Shown piece by piece: positions 1 through 63,575 of a stretch of 64,000 bases of DNA. A program made the translations under genes and the position numbers. A model generated the notes under the pieces. It was not told the origin of the DNA. It made no database searches and saw only the letters and a program-made list of their open reading frames with translations. The first letter of the stretch is position 1. Each line of letters starts with the position of its first letter. Location: assembly GCA_036785375.1 (NCBI GenBank), contig JAWMAR010000033.1, positions 9,548,001 through 9,612,000 of the forward strand, given 5' to 3'. This DNA comes from Leucoraja ocellata (Eukaryota).

Positions 1-725
1 CGTGATTACAATCGAGTCATCCGCAGCGTACAGATACATGATAATGGGAATAATATCTACAACGTTTGGTGCAAGATCATGCAAATAAAGTCCAATCAAC
101 GATTATCTGAGGGTCTCCAGTGAAGCAGATAGTAGCTCAGGACTAAAGGTAGACAAAAATGCTGGAGAAACTCAGCGGGTGAGGCAGCATCTATGGAGCG
201 AAGAAAATAGGTAACGTTTTGGGCCGAACCCTTCTTCAGTAGTTCAGGACTGCTCGTTTGAGAAAGAACTGCAGATGCTGGAATAATCGAAGGTAGACAA
301 AAATGCTGGAGAAACTCAGCGGGTGAGGCAGCATCTATGGAGAGAAGGAATAGGTGACGTTTCGGGTCGAGACAGGTCTGAAGAAGGGTCTCAACCCAAC
401 CCTATTCCTTTGCTCCGTAGATGCTTCCTCACCTGCTGAATTTCTCCAACATTTTTGTCTACCTAGTCCAGGACCGCTCTCTCGTTGTGGTAGGATGGTT
501 CAGTTGCCTGATTGTAGTCGGGAAGAAACTGTCCCTGAATCTGGAGGTGTGTGTTTTCACACTTCTATACCTCTTGCCCGATGGGAGAGCAATGTCTGCT
601 GGCCTTGCCGAGGCAGCGTGAAGTGTAGATGGAGCCAATGGAAGGGAGGTTGGTTTGTGTGTGGTCTGAGCTGCGTCCACAATTCACTGCTACTTCTTGC
701 GGTCTTGGATGGAAGCTGTTCCCAA
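1..725 (-). mobile_element. Rex1/Babar-like (L2-group) LINE 3' fragment interrupted by hammerhead-bearing repeats
   Basis: LPSGKRYRSVKTHTSRFRDSFFPTTIRQLN-type C-terminus on minus; related copies at 32635-32900 and 63825-63950. Confidence 0.6.
146..465. mobile_element. Cluster of Penelope-type hammerhead repeats (one single copy and one inverted pair)
   Basis: gtagacaaaaatgctggagaaactcagcgggtgaggcagcatctatggag...cccttcttcag and its reverse complement. Confidence 0.75.
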
Positions 726-1114
726 AACATTGTCTTGGACATTGGCTTGGATGAGCATTGGACACTTGCAGCACCACCCCACGTGGCCTTCACCTTTGGC
801 AAACTCCTTTGTAAATTATTCATGCAATCAGAATTCAGATTCAGATTCAGATTCAATTTTAATTGAATCTGATGAATTGCAATCTTTTCAGTAGAAAGAA
901 GGAACTGCAGATGTTGGCTAATGGATAAATGGATGCAAAGTGCTGGAGTAACTCAGCAGGTCAGGCAGCATCTGTGCAGAACATGGATAGGCGATATCTG
1001 CATGTAATCCAACCAAATCAGAAAATACTACACATAAATACAATCAAGCCAACCTCAAGTATAACCGTAAGAACAAAGGGAAAGATACAGAGTGCAGAAT
1101 ATAGTTCTCAACAT

Positions 1115-1375
1115 TGTAGTGTAGCAGAGACACAGTCCAATGTCCGCAATGGGATAGGTTTGTGAATCGAGACTGTACCCTAGCTTGGTCCCGTTGTTCC
1201 AACCTACCCCATTGTGGACGTCCACTGTGTCACTGCTACTTCTTGTGGTCTTGGATGTCTTGTGGTCACGTGTAGTGTAGCAGAGACACAGTCCAATGTC
1301 CGCAATGTGATAGATTTGTGAATCGAGACTGTACCCTAGCTTGGTCCCGTTGCTCCAACCTACCCCATTGTGGAC
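1115..1375. repeat. 105-bp direct duplication (1115-1219, 1271-1375)
   Basis: Near-identical copies differing at about 3 positions. Confidence 0.9.
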
Positions 1376-1671
1376 ATGCCCTTTTTTAAATTTGCATTTT
1401 CTTTATAAACATAATGCTATACCACTATTGTGCATTACTCTGGTATTTTGCACTATCTGTTGTACTTGTGAATGGCTAGATTGCACTCATGATTTGACTG
1501 GATAGCACGCCACAAAGATTATCACTGTATTTCAGTGCAACTGACAATAATAAGCCATGAGCAAGCTCATGTGTGTGCGGAGAACGGAGTGCGTACATTT
1601 ATGGGAGGTGTGTGGAAGGGCAGAGCTGGGATAATCGATTGTGAAATGCATGTCCTCGTTCTTCCCTTCAG

Positions 1672-1771
1672 CGAGGAGTCGCTGGTGATGATTGAAGAAA
1701 GTCAGAACTACCGCAGCCAGCTTCTGACCGTCATGCAGGAGACAATCCAGGACCGAGATAACTCCTTGCAG
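1672..1771 (+). CDS. IKBKB: IKK-beta penultimate coding exon (EESLVMIEESQNYRSQLLTVMQETIQDRDNSLQ)
   Basis: ttcAG acceptor and CAG|GTAAG donor; helical segment preceding the IKK NEMO-binding motif; splices in phase 0 to the LDWSWL exon. Confidence 0.85.
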
Positions 1772-2391
1772 GTAAGATCGGCCACACAGCACCTCACTTG
1801 TTTGTATTCACTTACAGCGGTTCCCCTTGCTACATTTCATTCACTTCCGTGGGGCTACATGTGCTGCCACTGCTCCTGTGTTATCAATACGGCACTTTAG
1901 GAAATTTTACTCTACGTTTGACCCTGTACAGGGACTGTGAGTTGAAGAGTTTTACCTTAAAAAAGACACGAAGTGCTGGAGTAACAGCTGGTTAGGCTGC
2001 ATCTCTGGAGAACATTTCATGGTCCCTTCTTCAGACTGGTGATGTTTAGGGTTGGGACCCTTCTTCAGACTGATGTAAGGTTGAAGTCGGGTCCTCTCTT
2101 CAGACTGGTATGTTTCAGGTCGGGACCCTGCTTCTGATGCAAATGGTTTTTCAGTTTTACCAAACCTGTGCTGGGTTAGAGCTACACATGTCTGATGGAA
2201 ACACAAGTTACGATGCCTTGTGTTGACCTCAAGACACTTATAGGCCTAAGTCAGCACAGGTTAGGTACAGTAAAACTCTTCATGCTTATTCCCAATGCAC
2301 GCTTCCAGTAGTGGATCAAGCTCAAAGTTTACGGCCAAAAATAACAAACAAACTGTCAGCTTTCTTCATCTGTTTTTATTCCTTGTTTCAG

Positions 2392-2421
2392 TCACTGGAT
2401 TGGAGTTGGCTGTCCAGCTAA
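2392..2421 (+). CDS. IKBKB: IKK-beta last coding exon SLDWSWLSS* (NEMO-binding domain)
   Basis: Pyrimidine tract and AG at 2390-2391; LDWSWL is diagnostic of IKKalpha/beta; neighbours POLB and DKK4 favour IKBKB. Confidence 0.88.
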   Translation, partial: SLDWSWLSS

Positions 2422-3118: not shown

Positions 3119-3584
3119 TAAAATTCCGTTATATGTGCCTTATAAAAGTGCAGTCACAATCTTATCTGTATGTAATGTTATAGTTAAGTGATGCCACTGT
3201 AACGCTGATGTTTTAACTAAATAGTCACCTTTGTGGATGTAGGTGAGTATTGTTATATACACCAGGGTGCAAAAATATGGAGACCTAAGAGACTGCAGAT
3301 GCTAGTGTCTTGTGCAAAAACAAAGTGCTGGAAGAACTCAGTGGGCCAGGCAGCATCTGTGGAGGAAAATGGACAGATGATGTTTCAGGTTAGGATCTGT
3401 CTTCAGACTGATGGAATACAGGGGAGAAAAGTGAGAGGGGAGGGGGCAAGAACAGCTGTTCCCTCCCCATCCTCACCTCCTTACCAGCTTTCTTCGTTCC
3501 AGTGAAGAAGGATCCCAATCTGAAACATCTCCTGTCTATTTCACCCTACTGACCCACTGTGGTGAGAGATGGAGACAATAATAA

Positions 3585-3925
3585 TGTGTGGTCCTCACCC
3601 TTTCTCCCACCTGCCTTCCGCATCTATTCTCCGACAGTTCTGCCACCTTCAATGTGATCCCGCCACTGCTCACATCTTCCTGCCATCACCCCTTTCTGCA
3701 GGAGGTAGGGACAATGCTCTCCAGAAGTCTCACTGACTCTGCCCCTCCCCAAGCACTTTCACCAGCAACCTCAGGGGATATAACACCTGCCCCTACACCT
3801 CCTCACTCACCTCCATCTTCTAGGGACCCCAGTAATCCTTCCAGGTGAGGCAGAGGTTAACATGCACTTCATCAAACCTCATCTCCTGCATCCAGTGCTC
3901 CTGATGTGGTCCTCTCTACATTGCC
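3585..3925 (+). mobile_element. Penelope-like element remnant (GIY-YIG endonuclease region)
   Basis: QVRQRLTCTSSNLISCIQCS*CGPLYI resembles the PLE consensus FTCxSxNxIYCIxCxxCxxxYIG. Confidence 0.7.
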
Positions 3926-4450
3926 AGGACCTGGGTCCAGAGCCTGGGGCTAGGTCGGTCCCGGAGGCCGGACTTGGGCGATGTCCCGGGATGGGGGTCC
4001 CAGCAAGATCAAAAACTTAACCCTAATGCAATTACAGTTCCTTCCTACACATTAAAAATACTAATGGTAACTGATAACCTTTTCTTACACAGACTATTCA
4101 TAATTTGATCTATCATGTATACAACATCATTATTTACCTGCTCTTATCCTCAACTGACATCCTAAACCTGTAGAATTTGCTTGTGTTGTTAGAGTATTGT
4201 TTTTCTAAGACTGGAAAACTGGGCTGGAGATCAGGGGAGCACTTTGTACATTGGGGCTTGGATGATATTTCTTATCACGTCCTCTTGGCTCATGAGTATC
4301 ATAAAGCTAGCTGGATAAAGGATCTAATATCTCCATTGTAAAAATGCAAGGCTGAAGATCAAGAGAGTTTCATTGTCATGTGTCCCAGACAGAACAATGA
4401 CATTCTTACTTGCTGCAGCACAACAGTATATGTACACATAGTGCACTGTA

Positions 4451-5731
4451 TAGGGAGGTTTCACGGCAGTCGGGTCACGACTGCACCATGACCCGTACTG
4501 TTGCTAAGCTATTCCAAATGAATTGCAGATGGGCACTTACCATTGTTTCCAGCGTAGCGGGCCTGTTAAAACCCGCTGAAATGGTCAATTTTTATGCTGT
4601 AAATAATTATGGAAATCTGGATAAGCGTGTGAGACATTTAGCCTACTTCAGAATTCCAAAAGTGAGGAGAAATGACGGTAGATAGGAACGAGAGCTGAAG
4701 GGACAACAACAGCCAGAGTGCTTGGCGAACATTGGCCGTTTGCTCACTGCATTTCATCAACAGTAAGGCATTATTTGTGTTTTTTCTTGATTCCTTTGGC
4801 ATCTAAAAAGTTTCAGAAGTGATAAATGTGGCTGTAATTTTTTTAAATCGCCCATGGTTCTCGTGGGTTTTTACATACAAAATGGAAACGCCTCTGAAGA
4901 CACATTTACAACCAGATTTATCACTTCTGAGAATTCTTAGATACCAAAGGAATCAAGAGAAAACACAAATAATGCCTTACTTGATGAAATGCAGTGAGCA
5001 AACGCGATAATTCCCAATATTTTCAATGTTGACCAAGCACTTTAGCTGCTGTAGTCCCTTCAGTTCTCGCTTCTCTATACCTTCATTTCGCTTCACGTTT
5101 GGAATTGTGAAGTTAGGTACATGTCTCTCACACTTACCCCGACTCCCACAATTTTTTTCAGCGCAAAAATTCAACATTTTGGTGGTTTTTAACAGGTAGG
5201 AAAGTACACATTTCTTGCATTAATAACATATACCTGAAGTGACGGATGTCTTCAATAGAGCATGTCATTATACATTGTGATAGGTATGAGGAAGAAGACA
5301 AATGAGTGAACGATTCAGAAAAGAAAAAGTACAATTTGATTTAATAGATATTTTACAAAATAATTCATATAAGTGCTATCAAATCCTATTGCTTTTTCTC
5401 AGGGTAACCAATTTGTTTGAAAGATATAGGTTATTTGTAGGTAGACAAAATTGCTGGAGAAACTCAGCTGGTGCAGCAGCATCTATGGAGCGAAGGAAAT
5501 AGGCGACGTTTCGGGCCGAAACCCTTCTTCAGACTGATAGGTTATTTGTATATAAGTTATAATGTTATTTGATCCACACTCCACACCAGTTGGTGGTGGT
5601 AATGCACTAAAAAGTTGTTTGCCGACCGCCAAAAAAAACTACATAGAAGAAGATAGATGTCTTCCAGTTGGATTTTTGTGGCTCGGTGCATCGAGCCCTA
5701 TGACCCGGTGACCTTTCGTGCAACCCCCCTA
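4451..5731. mobile_element. Non-autonomous fold-back DNA element with TAG...CTA ends
   Basis: Imperfect TIR TAGGGAGGTTTCACG / CGTGCAACCCCCCTA; internal ~280-bp inverted arms (~4563-4837, ~4907-5194); flanking direct repeat catagtgcactgta. Confidence 0.7.
5440..5536 (-). mobile_element. 97-bp hammerhead-bearing short element with 14-bp TSD
   Basis: ataggttatttgta at 5426-5439 and 5537-5550; minus strand reads CTGAAGAAGGGTTTCGGCCCGAAACGTC. Confidence 0.85.
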
Positions 5732-5929
5732 CATAGTGCACTGTATACAATATGATAAACGAGGGAGAAACAAAGAAATAAAATAATGAATGATTGGGGA
5801 GTGAAGAATGTGGAGAGAGATCTGATGAGATTGGGGTGATATTAATTGTGAACGCTTTAACACCTCCAGTTTAAATTCCATTTGGAATATTTTGGAGGAC
5901 CAAGAACCAAGAACATCTCCTGCAGGGAC

Positions 5930-6230
5930 TCTGACCCCGGGCCCAGGACATCACCTACCCCGGGACATTGCCCCAGCCCCCCCCCCCCCCTGAGGCCCGA
6001 CCTTGCTGGGACCCCCATCCAAGGACCGACCAAGCCCCAACTCGGGCCCCAGGCTCCAGACCCGGGCCCTAGGACTAGGCCCCCCCCGCCCGTTGCCCTG
6101 GCGACCGCCGCCGTTGCCGGGACGGAAGCGGCTGCCATGACGATGGCGGCGGCAGCGTGCGCGCCCCCGCGGCCGGGCGTGCGTGCGGGCGGTTGGACGG
6201 TGACGCTGGAGCGGTGGTGAGTGAGTCCGG
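5930..6230 (+). promoter_or_regulatory. CpG-island promoter and probable non-coding first exon of ENKD1, with RFX X-box-like motifs
   Basis: GC/CpG-rich island; GTTGCCCTGGCGAC at 6092-6105; CGGAAG ETS-like core; GTGAGT donors at 6217 and 6221. Confidence 0.6.
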
Positions 6231-6231
6231 G

Positions 6232-7337: not shown

Positions 7338-7339
<2 letters not shown>

Positions 7340-11100: not shown

Positions 11101-14100
11101 AGTATGAATCCGTTCCATCAAAAGTGATGGCTCGCTTACAGGTAAAGGCCCGGCCTAGGTGTGAGAGAAGCTCCTGGCAGGCAGGAGAGTAGTGGGAGGC
11201 TCCTGAATGAATAGTGAGATGGATAAACTTGCACAAAGCAGAACAGAGTAAATGACTTGTGTGTGGGCTCCGTATGAAGTTAAGTCTCTCTCGAAAGCAT
11301 CCAGAGAACTGGCCTCCACCGCCCTCTGAGATAGTCTTGGAGATAAAACTTGGAAACCTGTCTTTCAGCCCAACGAGTCCAGGCCGACCATCGATCCCCC
11401 GTTCACACTAGTTCTATGTTATCCCACTTTTGGGTCTCGCTTTTGGCACTCAGCCATGATCATATTGAATGGCGGTGCAGGCTCGAAGGGCCGAATGGCC
11501 TACTCCTGCACCTAACTTCTATGTTTCTATGTTTTGCATCCACACCCTACACACTAGGGGGCAATATACAGAAGCCAATGAATCTGCAAAGCTGCAAGTC
11601 TTTGGGATGAAACCCCAAAGGGAACGTGCAATCGCCACACAGACAACGTCCGAGGTCAGGATCAAACCCGGGTCTGTGGCATCGTGAGGCAGCATCTCTA
11701 CCAGCTGTGCCACTGTGCCACCTGAAAGTGTACCACTGTGATAGCAAAGAAGTGACAATCATGACATGCCAGGAGCACTCTACTCTCAAGAGAGAGCTAG
11801 ATTGTATCTGGTCAAAGACAGTCACAGTGAATACATGCCTGTAACCAGGTTGCAGACTTGCAGACTTTCCCAAATGCTGACTGATTCCTTTTCTGTCTTT
11901 TCTGTCATTTCTCCTCAGGACAACACATCCCCCAAGCCTTTGGATAATCAGCACTACCTTAAAGCTCACTCGCGATGTGGGACTGGGGTCGGTCCCAAGA
12001 GATCCACATCCCCGAGCCCAACAAAAGCAGAGGCGTGTGTCGAGGCTCCAGAGGATTCTATCGCAAATGTGAGTGAAATATTGGACAGAACTCACGAAGT
12101 ATTTAAACGTAGGTAGACAGAAATGCTGGAGAAACTCAGCGGGTGAGGCAGCATCTATGGAGCGAAGGAATAGGTGACGTTTCGGGTCTTGACCCGAAAC
12201 GTCACCTATTCCTTCGCTCCATAGATGCTGCCTCACCCGCTGAGTTTCTCCAGCATTTCTGTCTATCTTTGATTTTTCCAGCATCTGCAGTTCCTTCTTA
12301 AACATTGCGTATTTAAACATGACTGTTTCATGCTTTGTTTAGTTTAGTTCAGAGATACAGCACAGAAACAGCCCCTCATCCCATTGAGCCTACAATCACC
12401 TGTTCACACTAGTTCCAAATTATCCCAATTTTCCATCCACTCCATACACACTAGGGGCTATTGACAGAGAGCAAATGAACCTGCATGTCTTAGGGATGTG
12501 GATGTGGGAGGAAACTTACTCGGCCACAGGGAGAATGTGCATACTCCACACAGACAGCATCCGAGGTCAGGATTGAACTTGCGCCCTGGCACTGTGAGGC
12601 AGCAGCTCTACCAGCTGCGCCACTGTGCTGCCCAAATGATCAAACTGAAGCGTTACTCAATCCAAGGACAATGTTACCAACTTGCAAACTCATTGCCCTG
12701 GGAAAGTGTCTGGGAAAGACTTTTGTGGGAACGTCTTGATAATCATAGAGCATAGAACAGTACAGTACAGGAACAGGCCCTTCAGCCCACAATGTCTGTG
12801 CCGAACATGATCTCAAGACCACGTATATTCCTGCACATAATCCATATCCCTTCATTCCTGCATATCCATGTGCCTATCTAAATGTCTCTTAATTTGCCAG
12901 GCACCCTTCACCATGCACATCTTTACACTTTGCCCCTTCACCTTGAAACTATGCCTTAAACCTCTGATATAACCTCTCTGTAAATTTGCTGTTATTGCAA
13001 CTAATGAAAGTGAATTTTGTTTCCTGGTGATAATTACTAACCTGCTTGTTTTTTTAATTGCAGGCTCAAATCACAGGCGTTGGTATAGATTTCATCAGGC
13101 ACAACGCCCAGAATGCAAGGAAAATGCCAGTACGACGCTCCAAATCTCTGCAGTCCCTGACAGACGTGCTGGACAGGAAAGAGAAAGAACAGCAGGACTA
13201 CATCAGCCAGAATAAAGGACAGCTACCGCAGTAGTAAGGAATGCATTATTCATCAATCCTTTTCCTTCACCTATTCCGCTGCAACTGGGTGCTATTGGTA
13301 GCTTTTATCTCCAGAAATTATCCCAGCCTCACTCACCTTAACCTCCTACTCAATCCCCGACATAACCTTCCACATATCTCCATACAGCGCCAGAGACCTA
13401 GGTTCAATCCTGTCTGTACGGAGCTTGTACGTTCTCCCCTTGACCTGTGTGGGTTTCTCCGGGAGCTCCGGTTTCCTCCCACACTCGAAAGACATACAGG
13501 GTTGTAGGTTAATTGTCTTGGGAAAATTGTACATTGTCCCTAGTGTGTGTTGGATAATGTTAGTGTGCGGGGATCACTGGTCGGCACGGACTCGATGGGC
13601 CGAAGGGGCTGTTACTGCACTGTGTCTCTAAACTAAATTAACCAAAGATGCCGTGCTCTGCTCTGCCTTGAACGGTCTTGCATTTGATCATCCCTGCTTC
13701 TGGCGATTCCTTTACATCTTTTCCAGAGCTAAATTTGCCGTTTGCTACCCTGTGAGATCGACCAATGTTGAATCACACATGCCGAGGCCGACCACGACTG
13801 TCCATGACTGTCCATGACCTCAGGTGGTGAACCCAGAGTCTTGCACCTGTGGCCCTTTGCCCTCTCACCTGTGTCAAGTACGACACAGTACAGCACAGGA
13901 ATAGGCTCTTCGGCCCACAATGTCTGTGCTGGACATGATGCCAGAATAAACTCTTCTCTCCTCCACAAGATGCATATCCCTCCATTCCCTGCATATCCAC
14001 CATCATATCCAAAAGCCTCTTAAATGCCACTATTGATTCTGCCCCCACCACTGCCCTGGCAGTGCATTCCAGGCATCCACCACCTTCTGTGTAAAAACAA

Positions 14101-47300: not shown

Positions 47301-50300
47301 TATTAGTGGTGAGGCAGGCAGCTGCTGCCTGTTGGTCTGTTTAGAATGAACTATTATCAGATAGTTGTGCATCTTTGAAGTGCTGGTTGAGACTTGGCCT
47401 GAAGCTTTGATAGCGGAGGCATCGATCAGGCATTAGTCTGTTTTACTACCTTGTCTGAATATTGATTGCCCGTTGAATCTCTGCTTTCTCTGCTTCCTTG
47501 CTTACCTGCTGGCACAGCCGGCCCAAGAAGTCTTTTTGTGACAGCTGCTTTGGAGACACAGGAAGTATTATTAAGTTTTAAACAACAGAGCCATTGTAAA
47601 CTTCATTTGGCTCAGACCGACCTTCCCTTACTGTGGTCTTACAGTATATTCTGTAACCATAATATCCTGATTTGACCTATGTTTCCAGACCCTTGCTGCG
47701 ACAATAAATGGCCTTCCCCACTTGCGCAATTTTCTTCGGCGACTGCCGGCACCCGTCATAGGTCGCCAAAAATTGTCAAAATGTCGACATGTATGTATGG
47801 TTGTGAGCAGTCGCCCAAAGAGTCGTACCTTTTTCTGGCCACTGTAGGATTTTCAACATTTTGAAATTTTCGGCGACCTGCTGCTACTATGACAGGGGTG
47901 GTCGGTGAGATTGCCACACACTAAAGGCAAATCTCCAGTCTATTTAATGTGTTGCCTTTAATGATGAGGATCAAAGAATCCCTGAACTACTTGGCCCATT
48001 GATCATTACAGGGTGACAACCACTACACACCTCAGTTTGCAACTCACCATTTCATAATGGATATCATAAAGGCTTTTTAACTGGATACAGTCTTGACCTC
48101 CTCACATCAAGAGTAACTGGCAGCATGCGTTTCTCAAAAGCGTTTGTTTTGTGATAGACTGAACCCATAGGATGGCCACAGCTCCACATAGAACCACATG
48201 GTACATCTGAACGACTACCTGAACTAAAAATCATAGCCTCAAACACATTGCTCCTTTGTGAGACTGGCATAGAGTCTTTGCTCACAGAAGATTCTTAGCA
48301 GATCAGCCCTCGTTGTGTGTACTTTGTAAGCAACTCTTGGTCGATGATTATTGGTGTTCAACTACATTGCCAACAACATTGCATTGATGAAGTAATAGGT
48401 GTCCTATTCCTTCTCTCCAGAGACGCTGCCTGCTCCGCTGACTTACTCCAGCTTCTTGTGTCTATCTTCACTGTAAACCAGCATCTGCAGTTCCTTCTTC
48501 TCATTCTATTTATAATTTGTATTTGCATAACACTAATGGCCCTGTCCCACAGTACGAGTTCATTTCCAAGAGCTCTCCCGAGTTTAAAAAAATCAAACTC
48601 GTGGTAAGCTCGGAGAATGAACGTAGCGGGTACGTCGGAGCTCGGGGACGTCGCTTAGCGGCTGGTAACGCTAACGGCAGGCACTCGGGAAGACTCGCTA
48701 ATGGCAGGTAAGCTCGGGAAGACCCGTGAAGATTTTTCGACATGTTGAAAAATGTCCACGAGAGCCCCGAGTACCGACGAGCGGCCATTACCGTAAATAT
48801 CCGAGTTCGAATCAGGGCAAACTCGGGAGAGAGCTCTTGGAATGAACTCGTACCGTGGGACAGGGCCGTTAAATTGTCAGTATTAAATCCCAAGGAAGAT
48901 GGATAAGGCCCATCAGACGACATGAATGAATTTGGTGAAGCTGACACAGGCGGCCTTTAATGAAGGAGCCATGTACAAGCAGCTGCTTGTAGATGCTCTA
49001 TTCTATGCTCAGTGTACATTGAGGAGGATTGCATATCTGTGGTTAGTAATAAAACCAGGTTGGATTATACTTAAGTAAAATATTTCTTCAGCGTGTAAGT
49101 TATGAACAATGTCACTAACAGCATTGGCGTTGCAGTTTTAGAAAGTCGGCAGCTCAATCTCCCTCCTGGGATAAATAAAGTTCTATCGTATTGTAAAAGT
49201 TCTCCTGTAATGAACTGCAGAAAATAGATTAGATATTTTCACTTGCAACTATTTTTCTAAAAGTAGGATTGCAGATTGTTTCATAATGCTCATGGTCGGT
49301 TAGAACTTATGAACAGTACAACCATGTGTCGGAGGGAGATGCAGATATTGGTTTAGATGGAAGATAGACACAAAAAGCTGGAGTAACTCAGCGGGACAGG
49401 CAGCATCTCTGGAGAGAAGGAATGGGTGATGTTTCGGGACATTTGTGTCTAACAGTACACCCATGATCCTTTTCTTTCTGAATGAACAAAAATACTTTGG
49501 ATTCAACACTTTTTGCTTCTCAAATGAAATTGCTCCTGTCAGGAACAGTTTGTTGTGCCCGGATGGAGCGTTGTGCATGGATTTTCCAGGAGCTACCTTG
49601 TCTCTCAGGCATAACACACACTGGTCAAAACGTCACCCATTCTTTCCCTCGATGCTGCCTCACCCGCTGAGTTACTCCAGCATTTTGTGGCTACGATTGC
49701 TCGTAAGGAGTTTGTACGTTCTCTCCGTGACCTGCATAGGTCTTCTCTTGGTGCTCTGGTATCCTCCCACATTCCAAAGACGTGCAGGTTTGTAGGTTAA
49801 TTGGCTTGGCATAATTGGAAATTATCTCTAGTGTGTGTGGAATAGTGTGAGTGTGCGGGGATCGCTGGTCGGCGCGGACTCGGTGGGCCTTTGGACCGGT
49901 GATTTAAAGTGTATTAAATATCGACATGCCCTGCCTGTTTTACCATAACATTTATAGTCTCTTGCAACTTATCACTATTCTCTTTACAGTTCACAATATT
50001 GCCACAAATCATCCCAAGAATTGTTTTTAAGTGAAACAAAATTTGAAGACGCCAATCTTTAGAGGACAGAATGTTACTTGTTTAATGATGCATAAATTAG
50101 TGTTAATGTTACTGTTTTGAGCAGGTTTAAACTATTCCCCACTTGGTGTTTGGCAAAAACGGAGTTGTTTAAAGATGATGTGGCTTGTGGTTCGAGTGGA
50201 ATATTTAATCAATCTGTATCATCCAGGTCATCAAGACAATCCCTTTCACAAAGATAAGCACACAGTGCTGGAGTAACACAACAGGTCAGGCAGCATCTCT

Positions 50301-53300
50301 GAAGAACATGGATAGGTGACGTTTTCTTCACATCCGAAACATCACCCGTTCATGTTCTCCAGAGATGCTCCCTGACCCGCTGAGTTACTCCAGCACTTTG
50401 TGCTTATCTTTGGTATAACCCAGCATCAGCAGTTCCTTTACATTACATCCTTTCGTTGAAGGGTTTTGGCCCGAACATTATCTATTTCCTTCGCTCCATA
50501 GATGCTGCTGCACCCGCTGAGTTTCTCCAGCATTTTTGTGTACACTGATCTGTTCTGTATTCATGCCTTCTATATTCTGTTGTTTTGTTTTTTTTTGCCC
50601 GACTGTTCAGGAATTGATTTTTTACTTGTGCTGCTTGTTTTACTGACAATTGCTAAAGATTGGTGAATTGTTTACTCTCTCTTTCCCTGCCTTTTTTGAA
50701 CAGGGTGTCTGCCGATTACCAGAAGAGAGTGATGGCACTGAGTATCCATTCAGGAGAATTGACATCAGGTGAGTTAATGAAATAATGATGAATCAAAATG
50801 CTCTATCCATCGGGTATTGGACCAGCAGGTAGAAGATGGGTGGCACCGGTTAAAATAAAGGAACCAGGAACTTTAATTAAACTCACACTAAAGTGTCTGC
50901 AATTAATTAAAAACATTAAGATCAAGAAAACATAGAAACATAGAAACATAGAAAATAGGTGCAGGAGTAGACCGTTCGGCCCTTCGAGCCTGCACCGCCA
51001 TTCAATATGATCATGGCTGATCATCCAACTCAGTATCCCATCCCTGCCTTCTCTCCATACCCCCGATCCCTTTAGCCACAAGGGCCATATCTAACTCCCT
51101 CTTAAATATAGCCAATGAACTGTGGCCTCAACTACCTTCTGCGGCAGAGAATTCCAGAGATTCACCACTCTCTGTGTGAAAAAGGTTTTCCTCATCTCGG
51201 TCCTAAAAGATTTCCCCCTTATCCTTAAACTGTGACCCCTTGTTCTGGACTTCACCAACATCGGGAATAATCTTCCTGCATCTAGCCTGTCCAACCCCTT
51301 AAGAATTTTGTAAGTTTCTATAAGATCCCCCCTCAATCTTCTAAATTCTAGCGAGTACAAACCGAGTCTATCCAGTCTTTCTTCAATAGTAGATAAACTG
51401 TAGATAAACTATAGATTAAGATAAAGAGAAAAGGGTAGTATGGTGGAGCAGTGGTAGAGTTGTTGCCTTACAGTGCTTGCAGCTCCGTGTGCTGTTTGTA
51501 GGTAGTTTGTACGTTCTCCCTGTGACCCACGTGGGTTTTCTCTAAGATCTTTGTTTCCTCCCACACTCCAAAGATGTACAGGTTTGTAGGTGAATTGGCT
51601 TGGTGTAACCTTGCTGTCTCCTCCCCTTCTCAGCTCTCCCTCAGCCCTTGGGCTCCTCCTCTTCCTTTTTCCTTTCTTCTCCCCACCCTACATCAGTCTG
51701 AAGAAGGGTTTTGACCCGAAACGTTGCCTATTTCCTTGCTCCATGGATGCTGCTGCACCCGCTGGGTTTCTCCAGCACCTTTGTCTACCTGGTATAAATG
51801 TAAATTGTTTCTTGTGTGGGTAGGATAGTGTTAATGTGCGGGGATCACTGGTCGGTGCAGACTCGGTGGGCTGAAGGGCCTGTGTCCGCGCTGTATCTAA
51901 ACTAAAACTAAAGTAAAATCAATTTTAACCTTGGAATAAAAATAAAGATGATTGAGAGGAACTCAGCAGGTCAGTCAGCATCTGTGGAGAGGAATAGCCG
52001 ATGAACAAGTGGATTGCTAAATTGCACATGAGATTAAAACATTAAAAAATGATTTTGGTTTAGTGCATAACTGTAAAAATTAACAATATATGCCGAAATC
52101 TAACTCTTTGTTGGCTGTTTCAGGAAGAAAGGATGTTAGTCTTCAATTGGTTTTATCTCGATGGTCATTAGGAGCGCTTTGTTGCTCCCAACAATAGTGG
52201 TCGTGATAGCTAGCTTTGCCATTGCCTTTATGTACTTGTATTCATGTATATTTAAAAGGGATATACCAAATGGAAACTATTTCAGAAATTGGGCAAGTGA
52301 ACACGATCCCAAACGCAAATGATTTGAGGAATGAACCACCTCCATTGTTCAGTAGCTTATGGTCCTTTGGCTAAAGGTTGCTAACTGTGGACGTTTCACC
52401 TGCAGGCTCATTCCAAAGGATCAGTATTTCTGTGGCGTGCTTTATTTCACCGGAAGTGATCTTTTTAACAAGAACATGAGGACCCAGGCCCTGGAAAAAG
52501 GCTTCACATTGAATGAGTACACTATTCGTCCATTGGGAGTGACAGGTAGGAGCTGAATCCTTTTGGAAGCATAGAAACACAAGAAACTGCAGGTGCTGGA
52601 ATCGTGAGCAAAGCATAAAGTGCTGGAGGAACTCGGCTGGTCAGGCAGCATCTGTGAAGAGGACAGATGGACCTGAGGACCTCCTGGTGGGGAGCGGGGG
52701 TGCAAAGGGACTGGACATCATGGTGAAGATGTGGAGATGGTGCCTAAAAACTGAGGTTGCTGACATGTTGGAGAACATGTGAGGTGTCTCGGATGTAGAT
52801 TAGGACTGGACAAGGTAGAACTGAGCTATTTGGTGATGAGTTACTGGAGAGTATTCTGAGGGGTAAGACAAATATATGCATTTGGGTAGACAGGGGCTGA
52901 CCAGGCTAGTCAACATGGTTTTGTATACGGGCGATTGTGCCTTATGAATCTGAGTTTTTTGAGGAAACAAAGCAAAAAGATGATTGAGAACAAGGCCATG
53001 GACGTCTATATGGACTCGACAAGCATTTGATAAGGTGATTTGATTTGGTAGGCTGGATTGAGACACTTCTTCAGATGTAGGTTAGATCTTATGGGATTCA
53101 CAGTCAAATAAATGTGCAGTCTTTTACTCCGAGTAGGGGGATTCAAGAACCTGGGGAGAGAGGTTTATGATGAGATTTGAAACTTAATAGGAACCTGAGG
53201 GGCAACCTTTCCCACAGAGGATGGTGGGCATATGGAATGAGCTGCCAGAGGAGGTGGTTGAAGCAGGTATTATAGCAACATTTAAAAAACATTTGGACAG

Positions 53301-57984: not shown

Positions 57985-58117
57985 TGTGGGAAGGAACTTG
58001 CGCGTGCTGGTTTAAACCGAAGATGGACACAAAATGCTGGAGTAACTCAGCGGGACAGGCAGCATCTCTGGAGAGAAGGAATGGGTGACGTTTCGGGTCG
58101 AGACCCTTCTTCAGACT
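57985..58117 (-). ncRNA. Putative minimal type I hammerhead ribozyme motif in a short repeat (core 58087-58114)
   Basis: Minus strand: CTGAAGA A GGGTC TC GACCC GAAAC GTC; stem I is weak, so activity is uncertain. Confidence 0.55.
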
Positions 58118-61100
58118 GTTGATAGAACCTAGATTTTTGAAGAAGGGTTTTATTTCCAGAAACTTGAGACGTTGTTTTGATTTGAGTTAAACTATGTGAC
58201 GTATACTATGAGCCCAGTTCTCTAAAAATCATGAAATATTACCTGAAATTTGGCAAATGTTTGTTTTACTAATTGAGTGCATGCATCAATATTTTGAGGT
58301 TGGATGTAAGTGATGGATGTGTGATTCTTCTTTCAGTTTGTCAGATCTTTAGGTTGTCTACTCTGTTGGTGGGTGGGGTGGGGGGGGAACATGAACTATA
58401 TATTACGGCTTTGAGAGGAAACATTCATTAGATTTAACGGAGGTTAGACTGCAGGTATTGTAATCTGGAGCAAAAAACAAACTGCACCAATCTCTCCCCC
58501 CCCACCCCCCCTCCCTCAATGTCAGTAAAATAGACAATAGATAATAGGTGCAGGAGCAGGCTATTTGGCCCTTCGAGCCAGCACCACCATTCAATGTGAT
58601 CATGGCTAATCATCCCCAATCAGTACCCCGTTCCTGCCTTCTCCCCATATCCCCTGACTCCGCTATTTTTAAGAGCCTTATCTAGCTCTCCCTTGAAAGC
58701 ATCCAGGGAACCTGCCTCCACCGCTCTCTGAGGGAGAGAATTCCACAGACTCACCACTCTCTGTGAGAAAAAGTGTTTCCTCGTCTCCGTTCTAAATGGC
58801 TTACTCCTTATTCTTAATGAAGTGGGGTGGCTATATCAACGGTGCTGAAGTGGTGATGGTTGAGAGTGTCAGGTTCCTCGGCATAAATCCCGCCAACAAT
58901 TGATCCTCATCGAGACACCTTGAAGCTGCAGCCAGGAAGGCAGGACAATGCCTTTAGCCTCGGAAGGCTAAGGAAGTTCGGCATGCCACCTCTCCCTCCT
59001 ACTAATTTCTACAGATGCACCATAGAAGGCATCTAGTCAAGATGCAGGTAGACAAAAATGCTGGAGAAACTCAGCGGGTGAGGCAGCATCTATCAGGATG
59101 CAGCACAGCTTTGCCCAACACTGCACTGAACTGCAGACAGTTGTGAATCACGTAGACCTCCCCCGACTCTCAGTCTGAAGAAGGGTCTCGATCCAAAGAA
59201 GGATCTCAACCCGAAACATCACCCATTCCTTCTCTCCAGAGATGCTGCCTGTCCCACCGAGTTACTCCAGAATTTTGAGTCTAGTACTAACTTTTATTGT
59301 TGTATTTTATACTTGTCTTATTTTATTTTAGCATGTTTTTATTTTCTATTCTTTTTAGTAACTGTAATTGCTTTTGATTGCTCTTTAATGCTTTGTGTAA
59401 AGCACTTTGAATCGCCTTGTTGTTGAAATGTGTTATATAAATAAACTTGCTTGCTATCTTTGGTGTAAACCAGCATCTACAGTTCTTTCTTACACATAGA
59501 CCAGCCCCTGTTAACTCCTTCTATACTTCCAGTTGATCTCTCAGTCTACCTTGTTTTGGCCCTTGCACTTTTCATGTATCTGCAGTTCCTCTGTTGCTGT
59601 TACACTATTCTCCACTCTGTTTATTTTCTCTGTTGCACTACCTGAGGTACTCGTGTCTGCCGTGAATCGCTTGGATAGCACACATCAATGTCTCTTGCTA
59701 CACACAAGAATTAACAAACACCAATATTCTTATGAGTGACACACATTCTAGATTGGGTTGAGAGCTGCTTACTTATGGTAATAAAATATGAGTGGTGAAA
59801 AGTTCTGCTCCTCTCCCAACTTATAAATTGAGTAGCTTATGTTCCATTTTAAGGACAGTATCACTAATAACTTTGTGCTACAAACTTCACAAGTTATGTT
59901 CAACTCACAACCTTTTATCCTTTGATGTAAGTGCTGGCGTTTGTGGACAGAAACTTTATTTTTCTTTTTGCACTCATTTGCAGAGGTATAAGAAGAAAGA
60001 ACAGCTTGGTTGACTTTACTGTTGTGTGTGTAATAGTGTGCGTTCTCTTTCACTATACTTTATAATATATGTTCCCTTTCAGCTAATAAAATATTAATCT
60101 GAATTGACATTGGAAGAAGTTGTATCAAATTTAATTTCACATTGGTCATGCAAAATTCTATTTAATGTAGAAAATAATATGAACATCTGCAGTTCCAGAT
60201 ACAAACATATCACATTTAGAAATTTGAACACTCCACACAACTGCTTAAAAAAATGAATTTTCATTTTTGCGCCATTTCAAGTGATTTTGTTTATTTGATC
60301 TTTTTGATTGATTTGAAATATTTTAAGTTTATAAATTATTAGAGTGTGAGATTATTAAATTGTTAAATAGCTTGAAATGCAGAAATAGTTACATAGTTTT
60401 GAAAAATAATAATACAAAATCAATTGATTTAACAAAAGATAGCATTTGTATATCGTTACAAATTGATACAGTAACTGAGCAGTGTATCCTGTAGCTGCGG
60501 AAAGCTAGACTGTACGAAATATATTTTTGGACAAGCTATGTTTGGAGTATTACATGGTGGTTTGGTCACCCTATTACAGGAAGGATGTGGAGGCTTTGGA
60601 GAGGGTGTAGAAGATGGTTTGAGGGGAGAAATATATACAATTTTGAGAGGCATCAATAGAATATTCAGGCAGAACCTTTTTCCCAGGGTAGTCACGGCTT
60701 TACGGCCAACGAGATGTGTGACAACTTTACCACAATCCACCACAGTCCCCAAGAATCTCTGCGTAGGAAGGAACTGCAGATGCTGGTTTAAACCGAAGAT
60801 AGACACAAAATGCTGGAGTAACTCAGCGGGACAGGCAGCATCTCTGGAGAGAAGGAACGGGTGATGTTTCATCAGTTTCGACCCAAAACGTCACCCATTC
60901 CTTCTCTCCAGAGACGCTGCCTGTCCTGCTGAGTTACCCCAAGAATTTCTGTTATCTTTGGTGGTGGATATAATCCTAGCACACGCTGGAGTGGCTAAGT
61001 CTTTATCCTGTTGCAGCATCTCCGTGTTCATTAAGTAATGAACCCTGCACATCCATGTTACAGCCATTTCAAACATGTTACATATGTCATTATACTGGAT

Positions 61101-61143
61101 GTGTCTACTTTCGATTTAAACCAGCATCTACAGTCCTTTCTAA

Positions 61144-61360
61144 GCCCCCGTCCCACTTAGAAAACCTGAACGGAAACCTCTGGAGACTTTGCACCCCACC
61201 CAAGGTTTCCGTGCGGTTCCCGGAGGTGGTTGCCGGAGGTTGCAGGTAGTGGAAGCAGGTATGGAGACTGACAAAAACCTCCGGGATCCGCACGGAAACC
61301 TTGGGTGGGGCGCAAAGTCTCCAGAGGTTTCCGTTCAGGTTTCCTAAGTGGGACAGGGGC
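61144..61360. mobile_element. PIF/Harbinger-type MITE, almost wholly palindromic
   Basis: ~85-bp TIRs gcccc(c/t)gtcccacttag...; TA-rich flanks. Confidence 0.82.
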
Positions 61361-62295
61361 TATTATACTATCGTTTGATTTATCCTTTAATTATTTTGTT
61401 ATTTGTATAGGTTCAAGACTGCAACCCTTTTTTTGTTCGTGAATCTACACAATTGGATTTATTTTTAGTATCTGTGTGCTGGATTGCTGTTGATACAGTG
61501 TTACTGTAAATCAGATGTCAAAAATGGGAACAAAAGTTGTTGAATATTTCAACAGAAAATACTCTTTCCCCCCCCCCCCCCCCTCCCAAAAAAGACTTTT
61601 CATTTAAAAAAAAAATCAGAAGATCCATAGTGTACTTTTTCAAGTACATGTCTAAATCATTGTGCTGCTGCAAGTAAGAATTTAAGCGTTCTATCTGGAA
61701 TATATGACACTAAAACACTCTCGACTCTTGACCAAGCTTCATTGCTTATAAAGAGGTCGCTGTAAGTTTGTGTAACAGGGGATGTGCACTCGATAATTCC
61801 CTCTCTGGGACACTTGCCTACAAAGCTATTTTGACTATTGAATTACAAACAAAAGTAGTGGAAAGAAAGAAATGCTGCCAGCACTGGAGATGTGGAATAA
61901 TGCAGGTGATAACAGCATGAAAGATTTAAATTAATGCCAACCATAGGTCTTCCTCAAAGAAGGTCCACAAGTAGCAGAATGTTTGTTTTTTCATGTATCC
62001 TCGAGATTGGGCTACTGTCTACAGCCATCTATATTTTGATGCACCAATTTATTTGGTATACAAAAATGCTGGAGAAACTCAGAGGGTGAGGCAGCATCTA
62101 TGGAGCAAAGGAATAGGCGCCTATTTCCTTCGCTCCATAGATGCTGCCTCACCCACTGAGTTTCTCCAGCATTTTTGTGTACCTTCGATTTTTCCAGCAC
62201 CTGCAATTCATTTGGAACAGCTTTGCTTAATGGTTTTATTGTGATTGGTGCAGTTTGCGACGTGGCTGCAGCAAGTATTCGGAGCTCAGCCCTCA

Positions 62296-62549
62296 CTAGA
62301 CGCGTTGGCAGACCCGTAGCCTGGAGTTGCCTTGAGACGAGTCTTCGTTCTGGTGGCGGCAGGCCAAGCCTGGTCCGCAGGCACACCGCTGGAAGATCTC
62401 TGGCCCCTGAGGGCCATCCTTCCTCCCTCGTTTCGAGCAGACCTGGCCTTCTTTCAGGACAGGCCGGCAGATCTTCGACCAGAAGTGACGGGCGCAACAC
62501 AGTCCAGCGGAACAATCTGAAGTTCTCAGGCACGTCTCCCCTTCCAGAC
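62296..62549 (-). CDS. DKK4: Dickkopf-4 last exon (CRD2, colipase-fold domain); upstream exons lie beyond the window
   Basis: [64 protein letters not shown]...RLRVCQRV*; ttgcAG acceptor on minus; DKK4-type RGxKD, PEIFQRC and RLRVCQ; convergent with POLB; AATAAA on minus at 62240-62235. Confidence 0.88.
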
Positions 62550-63189
62550 CTGCAAGGTAAAGAGTATTTATGAGCAAGGACATTTGCTCAGCTTATATCA
62601 TTAAATCTCCATATACACAGCTTGCACGCGCACATATTTCAAAGTCAAAGTCAACTTTATTCGTCACGTACACATATGAGATGTGCAGTGAAATTAAAAG
62701 TGGCAATGCTCGCGGACTTTGTGCAAAAAGACTGCAAAACAGAATGGAATAGAATCACATATTCACATATTGCATATTTGTGGGAGGAATAAAAGAAAAA
62801 AACAGCAATTTTAAAAAGTCACCACACAACAGTAAAGTTAGTCCCTGGAGAGATAAGTTTACAGTCCTAATGGCCTCTGGGAACAAACTCCTTCTCATCC
62901 TCTCCGTTTTCAGCATTTGCCTGCAGGATGTTCCATCACACAGCTAGCAATTGGTTACCACAGTTTAGTTTGCCCACACTGAACAAGAAGGGTCTCGACC
63001 CAAAACGTCGCCAATTCCTTCGCTCCTAGGCGCTGCCTCACCAGCTGAGTTTTTCCAGCATTTTTGTCGACCTTCAGGGAGATCGCATTCATCGAAACAG
63101 GTGTAGGTTGCAATCAACCTGGCGGCAACAATCAAATAGAACAACTTGTCCTACAACATTAGGCTGTGCACGCCATACGCAAGAAGAAG

Positions 63190-63575
63190 AGGTCTACCTT
63201 TGATTTTTCCAGCATCTGCAGTTCTATCTTCTACGGTCTGGAGAAGACTGGTCTGTACAGCAATATGTTTAAGAAGGAACTGTGCAGATGCTGGAAAATC
63301 GAAGGTAGACAAAAATGCTGGAGAAACTCAGCGGGTGCAGCAGCATCTATGGAACGAAGGAGCATCTATTTCCTTTGCTCCATAGATGCTGCTGCACCCG
63401 CTGAGTTTCTCCAGCATTTTTGTGTACCTGTACAGCAATATGTCTGGAGAAGGGTTTCGGCCTGAAAAGTCACCTATTTCCTTTGCTCCATAGATGCTGC
63501 TGCACCCGCTGAGTTTCTCCAGCATTTTTGTCTACCTTCGATTTTCCAACATCTGCAGTTCTTTCTTAAACACTC
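63190..63575. mobile_element. Nested hammerhead repeats (inverted pair inside a rearranged copy)
   Basis: Several copies in both orientations; duplicated ctgtacagcaatatgt flank. Confidence 0.7.

What the first reader, a model, noticed from the sequence alone, without database searches (positions are those of the whole stretch)
146..63575. Very abundant ~100-bp repeat carrying a minimal hammerhead-ribozyme core (Penelope-derived, retrozyme-like family)
Seen: roughly 45-50 loci in 64 kb share one short sequence whose end reads CTGAAGA-A-GGGT(CTCG or TTCG)RCCC-GAAAC-GTC. The cleanest copies are on minus at 58087-58114 and 5506-5533. Known: this matches the hammerhead core CUGANGA-stemII-GAAA...UH. 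An extra A after A9 occurs in natural hammerheads, and a loop-less palindromic helix III (ACGU) is typical of the minimal, dimer-cleaving hammerheads of Penelope-like elements. Penelope GIY-YIG and RT-linker remnants lie in the same window (3585-3925, 29260-29495). Inference: a high-copy, non-coding, PLE-mobilised ribozyme element. Caveat: stem I has only about 2 contiguous bp (CAGT vs ACCT/GCCT), so many copies may be inactive.
Basis: partly seen in the sequence, partly recalled or inferred. Interest (0 to 1): 0.82.

Follow-up and report, generated by a model that had tools for sequence, protein, structure and literature searches.

The report
Abundant Penelope-type hammerhead mini-repeat
A 97-base retroelement fragment that starts with a minimal hammerhead-ribozyme motif is scattered about once per kilobase here; its insertion scars match Penelope-like retrotransposons, a known kind, and the scattered copies look like decaying relics.

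Summary
A profile search finds 64 copies of one short repeat in 64 kb, 7.4% of the window.

- **Motif:** The 5' end reads CUGAAGA-A-(4-bp stem, tetraloop)-GAAAC-GUC. Only 6 copies keep core plus stem II, and 2 are fully intact.
- **Match to published class:** It has all four sequence features published for metazoan Penelope-like-element (PLE) minimal hammerheads (PMC4209133).
- **PLE insertion signature:**
  - 5' truncation and no poly-A.
  - 13 head-to-head inverted pairs against 1.1 expected.
  - An optional 32-nt 3' tail, never on both arms of a pair.
  - AT-rich 10-16-bp target duplications around 96-97-bp units or whole pairs.
  - Head-to-tail junctions.
- **No sign of ribozyme activity or selection:**
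  - No Rfam hit.
  - No covariation and no excess core conservation.
  - The predicted fold is not a hammerhead.
  - No RNA-read ends pile up at GUC.
  - Unit ends are not at the cut site.
- **Unconfirmed:** The Penelope ORF remnants.
- **"Retrozyme-like":** weakly supported.

First-stage readers noted the same repeat on other pieces of this genome; none was followed up.

Verdict: a new member of a known kind, notable mainly for its density.

The parts
146..63539 (.). Span holding all 64 copies of the repeat family (29 on +, 35 on -)
   Evidence: nhmmer census
58022..58118 (-). Best-preserved full-length unit. It starts at C58118 (CAGTCTGAAG...); a decayed tail follows, down to about 57985
   Evidence: (score 98.1). 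Contigs of three organisms lose likeness at 58116-58118 (table 7)
58087..58114 (-). Intact minimal hammerhead motif: C3UGAAGA9, extra A, stem II GGGU/ACCC with loop CUCG, G12AA, palindromic A15.1-C-G-U16.1, C17. Predicted cut after C58087
5440..5536 (-). 97-bp full-length unit with intact motif, flanked by a 14-bp target-site duplication (5426-5439 and 5537-5550)
28239..28334 (-). 96-bp full-length unit flanked by a 16-bp target-site duplication (28223-28238 and 28335-28350)
12109..12308 (.). Head-to-head inverted pair inserted as one event (10-bp duplication). Arms are 96% alike, the turn lies in the stem II palindrome, and only the right arm has a tail
22453..22640 (.). Head-to-head inverted pair with a 10-bp duplication; tail on the right arm only
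30630..30785 (.). Head-to-head inverted pair with an 11-bp duplication; both arms 5'-truncated just past the cut site; tail on the right arm only
40781..40987 (.). Head-to-head inverted pair of full-length arms with an 11-bp duplication
60763..60794 (-). The optional 32-nt 3' tail of copy 60795-60883. Contigs of three organisms lose likeness at 60795 (short end) or at 60763 (tail end)
   Evidence: (table 7)
146..464 (.). Complex insertion: two head-to-tail units on - (the upstream one tailed) plus an inverted unit on +
50251..50543 (.). Complex insertion: an inverted pair followed, after the tail, by a further unit in direct orientation
62055..62186 (.). Inverted pair whose two arms both begin at the first nucleotide after the predicted GUC cut (palindrome centre between 62118 and 62119)
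   Evidence: a single case, about 0.26 expected by chance by my estimate
3566..4105 (+). Possible decayed Penelope RT-EN linker and GIY-YIG remnant, broken by stops. Not part of the repeat unit and not confirmed
   Evidence: By-eye pattern. Pfam found 0 families, HMMER representatives gave 1 unrelated hit, PDB gave 0

Best explanation
The repeat is the short product of Penelope-like-element (PLE) retrotransposition.

Shown:
- The unit is 96-97 nt, or about 130 nt with an optional 32-nt tail.
- Its first 32 nt are a PLE-type minimal hammerhead motif.
- It inserts at AT-rich sites and leaves 10-16-bp target duplications.
- It occurs singly, as 5'-truncated copies, as head-to-head inverted pairs made in one event with the tail on one arm only, and sometimes head to tail.

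Inferred, by analogy with the Anolis Poseidon element:
- A PLE RT/GIY-YIG protein nicks the target.
- It starts reverse transcription inside the RNA at either of two sites about 32 nt apart.
- It copies towards a fixed RNA 5' end lying 3-4 nt upstream of the hammerhead core.
- It often turns back on its own product, preferentially at the stem II palindrome or at the RNA end.

The hammerhead would act, if at all, as a weak, dimer-dependent and probably protein-assisted ribozyme in tandem source transcripts. It did not define the ends of the copies. The dispersed copies are non-coding, decay mainly at three CpG sites, and are carried passively in host transcripts.
For: Motif. [quoted passage not shown]

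Insertion signature.
- 28 of 64 copies reach the 5' end and 56 of 64 keep the 3' end.
- 0 of 56 have poly-A or a microsatellite downstream.
- There are 13 head-to-head pairs against a random mean of 1.1 (max 5 in 1000), and none tail-to-tail within 30 bp.
- Arms resemble each other more than other copies in 10 of 13 pairs.
- The tail is on one arm in 8 of 11 scorable pairs, on both in 0, and on neither in 3. It is present in 5 of 32 unpaired copies.
- This is the arrangement drawn in PMC8557442 Fig. 2 (legend seen).
- Duplications of at least 10 bp occur at 6 of 48 insertion complexes (null 99th percentile 10). They bracket 96-97-bp units or whole pairs.
- Their GC is 0.25 against 0.44 for the window (share of random draws at or below this: 0.002).

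Family-wide ends. Contigs of three coded organisms diverge at 58116-58118 (5' end) and at 60795 or 60763 (two 3' ends 32 nt apart), with A/T-rich, low-agreement flanks. Dozens of contigs per run join a tail end directly to a 5' start.

Parallel. PMC11167929 (main text read) reports an HHR at the pLTR/ORF junction, two internal RT start sites whose spacing equals the 30-40-bp tail, AT-rich nicking, both strands extended, an HHR dispensable for insertion and active only with protein, and no RNA-seq ends at the cut site.
Against: - No autonomous PLE carrying this unit was seen. Homology stops at the unit's 5' end in every full-length copy of the window.
- The nearby ORF remnant is unconfirmed.
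- Helix I has about 2 bp.
- No Rfam hammerhead model matches at E up to 10, even on 161 nt.
- The predicted MFE of the unit is not a hammerhead. The CUGAAGA box pairs with a downstream CCUUCUC stretch; z-scores are 0.38 and 0.57.
- Core positions are no better kept than the rest of the unit.
- Across three subfamilies, 0 of 12 core columns differ against 9 of 68 elsewhere, Fisher p 0.34.
- Stem pairs co-vary no more than shuffles do.
- What fixes the RNA 5' end is unknown.
- Oligo-dT RNA reads show no pile-up of starts there or at the cut site (table 6). Short non-polyadenylated RNAs would be missed.
Confidence: 0.75

Rival explanations
1. It is a non-LTR retrozyme. Tandem units would be transcribed, cut by the hammerhead, ligated into small circular RNAs, and reverse-transcribed into new tandem or monomer copies.
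For: Head-to-tail arrangements exist. There are 3 same-strand adjacencies in the window, and dozens of contigs per run join a tail end to the next unit's 5' start. That would put two motifs about 130 nt apart, as a dimeric hammerhead needs. The bioRxiv preprint 10.64898/2026.07.22.740005 (abstract and Results part 1 read) derives vertebrate retrozymes from PLE pLTRs.
Against: - Ends of TSD-bracketed units are fixed and lie 28 nt upstream of the cut site, not at it.
- Only 2 of 64 copies start within 2 nt of the cut site.
- Most copies are dispersed or inverted.
- The motif lacks the 6-bp helix I and the loop contacts of canonical type I retrozyme hammerheads (PMC7229834, passages seen).
- No RNA read ends pile up at GUC.
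Confidence: 0.12
2. It is an ordinary LINE-dependent SINE or LINE 3' tail, and the hammerhead likeness is chance.
For: It is short, extremely abundant, 5'-truncated and flanked by target duplications. LINE-like ORF fragments lie in the window (by eye). No hammerhead covariance model matches.
Against: - 0 of 56 3' ends are followed by poly-A or a microsatellite.
- ARAGORN finds no tRNA-like head.
- Inverted pairs, a one-sided 32-nt tail and two discrete 3' ends are PLE hallmarks, not LINE ones (PMC8557442).
- The descriptor hits 0.08 times per 128 kb of shuffled sequence. By my estimate, chance would need roughly 1e-5 or less per repeat consensus to give the whole motif.
Confidence: 0.05
3. The inverted pairs are fold-back or MITE-type DNA transposons, and the single units are their halves.
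For: 13 near-palindromic pairs, several with target duplications. They score against microRNA-precursor models below threshold.
Against: The inner junction differs from pair to pair (profile positions 1 to 42). Arms are asymmetric, with the tail on one arm only. Single full-length units have their own 14-16-bp duplications, of variable length. There is a graded 5' truncation series.
Confidence: 0.03
4. The dispersed copies are active cis-cleaving ribozymes that the host uses, for example to process or regulate transcripts.
For: Two sense-strand copies with an intact core (33028+, 51698+) lie in the same strand as a DNA polymerase beta exon.
Against: - Only 6 copies keep core plus stem II, and decay follows CpG sites.
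- There is no strand bias: 29 on + against 35 on -.
- There are no read-end pile-ups.
- Monomers of this class are reported inactive in vitro (PMC4209133).
Confidence: 0.03

Closest known systems
Minimal hammerhead ribozymes of metazoan Penelope-like elements (Cervera & de la Pena 2014, PMC4209133)
   Same: CUGANGA/GAAA/UH boxes; one unpaired nucleotide between A9 and G10.1; G10.1-C11.1; palindromic 15.2-16.2 with no loop III; short helix I (2 bp, as reported there for D. virilis). Copies are mostly single and dispersed, with some close pairs on opposite strands.
   Different: Stem II is only 4 bp with a tetraloop, where the paper reports 6-8 bp for several families. The density is far higher: 17 core-like matches and 6 strict motifs in 64 kb, against about 4,000 and 9,000 per genome reported for coelacanth and Xenopus. 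Location inside a pLTR was not shown here.
Poseidon PLE of Anolis carolinensis, PAc (Frangieh et al. 2024, PMC11167929)
   Same: The hammerhead lies about 70-100 nt upstream of two alternative cDNA start sites, whose spacing equals the optional 30-40-bp tail. Targets are AT-rich and both strands are extended. No RNA-seq ends appear at the cut site.
   Different: In PAc this stretch is the pLTR/ORF junction of a coding element, and the ORF starts in stem II. Here no shared ORF runs through the unit, and copies end 3-4 nt upstream of the core.
PLE insertion architecture (Craig et al. 2021, PMC8557442, Fig. 2 and text)
   Same: 5' truncation, partial tandems, an inverted 5'-truncated copy abutting the unit, and a 30-40-bp tail often at one end only.
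   Different: Those descriptions concern 3-4-kb coding elements. Here the whole insertion is 96-207 bp.
Metazoan non-LTR retrozymes (Cervera & de la Pena 2020, PMC7229834; Li et al. 2026 preprint)
   Same: Short non-coding hammerhead-bearing repeats that co-occur with PLEs and are thought to be mobilised by them. Target duplications are longer than 4 bp, and monomer derivatives are dispersed.
   Different: Retrozymes carry canonical type I hammerheads in 150-450-bp tandem arrays and are expressed as circular RNAs. This unit is shorter, has a minimal motif, is mostly non-tandem, and its ends are not at the cut site.

Membership tests
Metazoan PLE minimal hammerhead (min-HHR) | Catalytic boxes CUGANGA ... 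GAAA ... UH in type I order | tested here: met
   Present in the majority sequence and in 6 copies that also keep stem II; 2 are fully intact
Metazoan PLE minimal hammerhead (min-HHR) | [quoted passage not shown] | tested here: met
   The extra A is kept in 32 of 35 copies covering that column (column 18)
Metazoan PLE minimal hammerhead (min-HHR) | G10.1-C11.1 pair closing stem II | tested here: met
   G-C in 18 and G-U in 5 of 28 full-length copies (pair 16/28)
Metazoan PLE minimal hammerhead (min-HHR) | Palindromic 15.2-16.2 and no loop III, so helix III can form only between two motifs | tested here: met
   ACGU in the intact copies; the CpG has decayed in many others
Metazoan PLE minimal hammerhead (min-HHR) | Lies in the pseudo-LTR of an element encoding RT and GIY-YIG endonuclease | tested here: inconclusive
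   No copy extends into other shared sequence. The candidate ORF remnant at 3566-4105 is unconfirmed. The genome outside the window could not be searched
Metazoan PLE minimal hammerhead (min-HHR) | Self-cleavage after H17 as a dimer | not testable with these tools
   Indirect evidence only: no read-end pile-up in oligo-dT RNA reads (table 6), and the MFE is not a hammerhead
Rfam hammerhead families (covariance models) | Score at or above the family gathering threshold | tested here: not met
   No hammerhead match at gathering or at E up to 10 on the window, nor on 161 nt around the best copy. That these models expect helices I and III is my recollection
PLE-mobilised insertion | 5' truncation with a preserved 3' end and no poly-A | tested here: met
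   56 of 64 keep the 3' end, 28 of 64 reach the 5' end, 0 of 56 have an A-run or microsatellite
PLE-mobilised insertion | Adjacent inverted 5'-truncated copy | tested here: met
   13 head-to-head pairs against 1.1 expected; 4 are bracketed by one duplication
PLE-mobilised insertion | Optional 30-40-bp tail, often at one end only | tested here: met
   32-nt tail in 13 of 56 copies (strict score). One arm in 8, both arms in 0, of 11 scorable pairs. Two family-wide 3' ends 32 nt apart
PLE-mobilised insertion | Partial head-to-tail tandems | tested here: met
   3 same-strand adjacencies in the window; tail-end to 5'-start joints in contigs of three organisms (table 5)
Non-LTR retrozyme | Canonical type I hammerhead (helix I about 6 bp, loop 1-loop 2 contacts) | tested here: not met
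   Helix I is at most 2 bp, standard in 60.7% of cells; the unit begins 3-4 nt before C3
Non-LTR retrozyme | Expressed as unit-length circular RNA cut and joined at the hammerhead site | not testable with these tools
   Only oligo-dT short reads were laid; genomic unit ends are not at the cut site
LINE-dependent SINE | tRNA/7SL/5S-derived head and an A-rich or microsatellite tail | tested here: not met
   ARAGORN finds 0, no Rfam small-RNA match on the unit, and 0 of 56 tails

The most novel reading that the evidence does not exclude
The 97-nt unit may not be mere debris of full-length Penelope copies. It could be a dedicated, separately transcribed ultra-short parasite of the PLE machinery, a 'PLE-SINE'. 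Its RNA would consist of little more than the minimal hammerhead plus the downstream hairpin and start sites that the PLE protein recognises. On that reading the hammerhead motif is kept as part of the protein-binding fold rather than for cleavage. Its spread to roughly one copy per kilobase would make this lineage by far the most hammerhead-rich vertebrate genome known.
Probability: 0.3. Interest if true: 0.6.

Novelty: new member of a known kind. Interest (0 to 1): 0.4.

Why it matters
PLE minimal hammerheads and PLE insertion scars are both in print, so the kind is known. This family adds a very large natural sample of tiny, cleanly bounded PLE insertion products: 96-97-bp units, one-event inverted pairs, one-sided tails and target duplications.

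From these the poorly understood PLE integration steps could be read genome-wide. Those steps are the internal start sites, the turn-back at the stem II palindrome, and the choice of tail.

The family also bears on the open question of what the PLE hammerhead is for. Here the copy ends ignore the cut site, which agrees with the in-vitro finding that the ribozyme is dispensable for insertion.

For annotation, the repeat fills about 7% of this gene-bearing window on both strands. It creates many hairpins that mimic microRNA precursors.

Tried and rejected
- **Rfam.** Gathering and E up to 10 on the window, and E up to 10 on 161 nt, gave no hammerhead. Only sub-threshold microRNA-like hits came up on the inverted pairs.
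- **Confirming the Penelope ORF remnants.**
  - Pfam on 7 stop-free pieces gave 0 families.
  - HMMER with the 56-aa piece against 1.84 billion representatives gave one unrelated low-complexity protein.
  - PDB sequences gave 0.
  - I did not read the remnant through its stops.
- **Longer parent element.**
  - Coverage profiles from five long seeds showed no shared sequence upstream of the unit.
  - All-against-all comparison of 200-nt upstream flanks showed none either.
  - A second very abundant repeat (58525-58820) is not linked to it.
- **Tail preceding the next unit.** This holds in only 2 of 28 full-length copies in the window.
- **Selection tests.** All were negative or inconclusive: per-column identity, subfamily majorities, pair counts.
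- **Folding.**
  - The monomer MFE is not a hammerhead.
  - The imposed dimeric hammerhead could not be scored, because it crosses as a pseudoknot in two-strand notation.
- **Literature.**
  - The exact 28-letter motif string occurs in 0 papers.
  - Searches for Penelope with shark, elasmobranch or cartilaginous found no description of this family.
  - Lunse et al. (PMC5785218) is not held, so I cite it only through a review's reference list.
  - Supplements are closed. The supplementary alignments of PMC4209133 and the supplementary tables of the 2026 preprint, which sampled one chondrichthyan, may already list this family.
- **Organism.** Names are coded. My impression that this repeat is typical of cartilaginous fishes is recollection only.
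- **Metagenome contigs.** 0 matches.

Full report
**What is there.**
- The core pattern with up to 3 mismatches occurs 17 times, against 0.00 in shuffles.
- A single copy finds 61 blastn HSPs.
- An iterated nhmmer profile finds 64 copies, 29 on + and 35 on -, covering 4,734 bp or 7.4% of the window.
- The window has no N.
- It carries at least one exon of DNA polymerase beta on the + strand.
- No tRNA-like gene is present.

**Anatomy of the unit.**
- Coverage profiles from five long seeds show homology beginning abruptly a few bases before CTGAAGA. It ends in two steps about 35 nt apart.
- Two young single copies are bracketed by target duplications. 5440-5536 is 97 bp with a 14-bp duplication. 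28239-28334 is 96 bp with a 16-bp duplication. The element therefore starts at CAGTCTGAAG.
- It ends near ...TGTCTACC.
- A fraction of copies continue for about 32 nt, the 'tail'. By a strict score, 13 of 56 copies with a 3' end have it; by eye the number is higher.
- 28 of 64 copies reach the 5' end and 56 of 64 keep the 3' end.
- 0 of 56 are followed by an A-run or a microsatellite.
- No reading frame is shared between subfamilies (my reading).

**Arrangement.**
- Thirteen minus/plus pairs face each other 5' end to 5' end within -40 to +30 bp. The random mean is 1.1 (max 5 in 1000), and no tail-to-tail pair lies that close.
- The inner junction differs from pair to pair but is nearly symmetric within a pair.
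- Three junctions lie in the stem II palindrome and four at the full 5' end.
- Arms are more alike than either is to other copies in 10 of 13 pairs.
- Four pairs are bracketed as a whole by 10-11-bp duplications, so each is one insertion event.
- Across all 48 insertion complexes, 6 have a duplication of at least 10 bp (null 99th percentile 10).
- Those duplications have GC 0.25 against 0.44 for the window (share of random draws at or below this: 0.002).
- The tail is on one arm in 8 of 11 scorable pairs, on both in 0 and on neither in 3. Two pairs could not be scored.
- Three same-strand adjacencies occur. In two of them a tailed copy precedes the next unit.

**Evidence from reads (runs found; organism names coded).**
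- I laid contigs of three organisms (X1, X5, X16) and oligo-dT RNA raw reads (X23) on 57900-63700 at 90% likeness.
- Bins holding the repeat have summed word depths of about 1e6 to 2e7, against 12-50 in unique bins. The tool warns that this is not a copy number. It does show very high abundance in all three.
- Hundreds of contigs per run lose likeness at 58116-58118, the unit's 5' end.
- Hundreds more do so at 60795 or 60763, the short and tailed 3' ends. The flanks are A/T-rich and of low agreement.
- Dozens of contigs per run join 58113-58118 to 60763. This is a tail end followed directly by the next unit's 5' start, so head-to-tail arrays exist.
- RNA reads cover the repeat equally in both mate orientations. 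92% of them run on into unlike sequence, which suggests passive read-through from many loci.
- Table 6 lists no place where many molecules begin or end, so there is no sign of ends at the GUC site or at the unit's 5' end. Short non-polyadenylated RNAs would be missed.

**Is it a hammerhead?**

By sequence features, yes, of the PLE minimal class:
- C3UGAAGA9.
- One extra A.
- A G10.1-C11.1-closed 4-bp stem II with a tetraloop.
- G12AA.
- A loop-less palindromic A-C-G-U.
- C17.

PMC4209133 (whole text read) lists the extra nucleotide, G10.1-C11.1 and the palindromic 15.2-16.2 as features that emerged without being searched for. It reports a 2-bp helix I in D. virilis, mostly single dispersed motifs, and close pairs on opposite strands. 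It also reports inactive monomers with weak dimer activity.

A strict descriptor hits 6 copies here, against 0.08 per shuffled window. By my estimate, the whole motif arising by chance in one repeat consensus has a probability of order 1e-5 or less.

By every functional proxy available, nothing supports activity:
- No Rfam hammerhead model matches, even on 161 nt at E up to 10.
- The unit's MFE pairs the CUGAAGA box with a downstream CCUUCUC stretch; z-scores are 0.38 and 0.57.
- Core columns are no better conserved than the body. Losses concentrate at three CpGs.
- Three subfamilies (25, 24 and 11 copies; 4 unassigned) differ at 0 of 12 core columns against 9 of 68 elsewhere, p 0.34.
- Helix I and stem II pairs behave like shuffles on all five measures.
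- Only 2 of 64 copies begin within 2 nt of the cut site.
- One inverted pair (centre 62118/62119) has both arms starting exactly after GUC. This is a single case.

**Who moves it?** The scars match published PLE behaviour.
- PMC8557442 (passages and the Fig. 2 legend seen) describes strong 5' truncation, partial tandems and an inverted 5'-truncated copy abutting the unit. It also describes a 30-40-bp tail often at one end only.
- PMC11167929 (main text read) shows the following for Anolis Poseidon:
  - The hammerhead sits at the pLTR/ORF junction.
  - Reverse transcription starts internally at two sites whose spacing equals the tail.
  - AT-rich DNA is nicked.
  - Both strands are cleaved and extended.
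  - The hammerhead is dispensable for insertion and cleaves only with protein.
  - RNA-seq shows no ends at the cut site.
- The present unit reproduces this geometry in miniature.
- What I could not show is the autonomous partner. No copy in the window extends into other shared sequence.
- The by-eye linker and GIY-YIG pattern at 3566-4105 got no support from Pfam, HMMER representatives or PDB.

**Rivals.**
- A retrozyme reading is kept alive by the head-to-tail joints. Three points argue against it: the fixed ends away from the cut site, the minimal motif and the mostly non-tandem layout (PMC7229834 passages; preprint abstract and Results part 1).
- A LINE-dependent SINE is contradicted by the lack of any A-rich tail or small-RNA head, and by the inverted and tailed structures.
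- A fold-back DNA transposon is contradicted by variable inner junctions, asymmetric arms and single units with their own duplications.
- Host-used cis ribozymes are contradicted by decay, by the absence of strand bias, and by sense copies with intact cores sitting on the polymerase beta strand.

**Novelty.** Two things are new here: the family itself, and its density together with its very small, cleanly bounded unit. I found no paper printing the motif or describing the family. Closed supplements may hold it. First-stage notes report the same repeat on other pieces of this genome, none followed up. Two of them, on this window, gave me the target-duplication lead and the 12099-12318 fold-back, and I checked both.

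**Verdict.** It is a new member of a known kind, of moderate interest.

Noticed in passing
window 29682-29765 (+); also 28936-29094 and about 20600 (+): An exon of DNA polymerase beta: the 41-aa piece matches PDB Pol beta chains at residues 183-210, E about 2e-7. Other pieces look like further Pol beta exons and the N-terminus by eye, so much of the window is probably intron of this gene.
   Followed up: partly
window 58525-58820 (+), with 17 further hits, e.g. 16824-17112 (-), 36644-36921 (+), 50937-51228 (+): A second, unrelated repeat about 300 bp long. Its summed read depth is as high as that of the hammerhead unit in all three organisms. The copy here is truncated at 58817, where reads continue with a consistent sequence. 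It is not adjacent to the hammerhead units.
   Followed up: partly
window 61198-61391: A third very high-depth repeat, with an 'opposite strands' joint at 61227/61286 in contigs of all three organisms.
   Followed up: no
window 17693-17775 and 4736-5003: A near-perfect 83-nt hairpin and a roughly 270-nt long hairpin. Both score against plant microRNA-precursor models well below gathering (E 1e-10 and 4e-11). The first overlaps a copy of the second repeat family. They are probably inverted repeat insertions, not microRNA genes.
   Followed up: no
window 62088-62148 (centre 62118/62119): An inverted pair whose two arms both begin at the first nucleotide after the predicted hammerhead cut. That is what a turn-back at the end of a cleaved template would give. 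It is one case in 13 pairs.
   Followed up: partly
window: upstream of copies 46943(-), 51701(+), 59196(+), 21110(-), 3403(-): A few, mostly older, copies carry a C-rich stretch of about 15-25 nt just upstream of CAGTCTG. Loose-end consensuses at 58118 in the read data also look G-rich on the + strand. It might be a longer 5' form of the element or a target preference. BLAST finds no significant shared upstream sequence.
   Followed up: partly
window 5860-7357 (-) and 19897-20857 (both strands): Long stop-free low-complexity stretches (Pro-rich; Gly/Glu/Arg-rich) with strong GC skew in 4001-8000. They are probably simple-sequence DNA rather than genes.
   Followed up: no
window 53435-54211 (-) and 16689-17276 (+): Stop-free stretches of 259 and 196 aa that look by eye like C-terminal parts of LINE ORF2 proteins. 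Pfam gave no significant family.
   Followed up: partly
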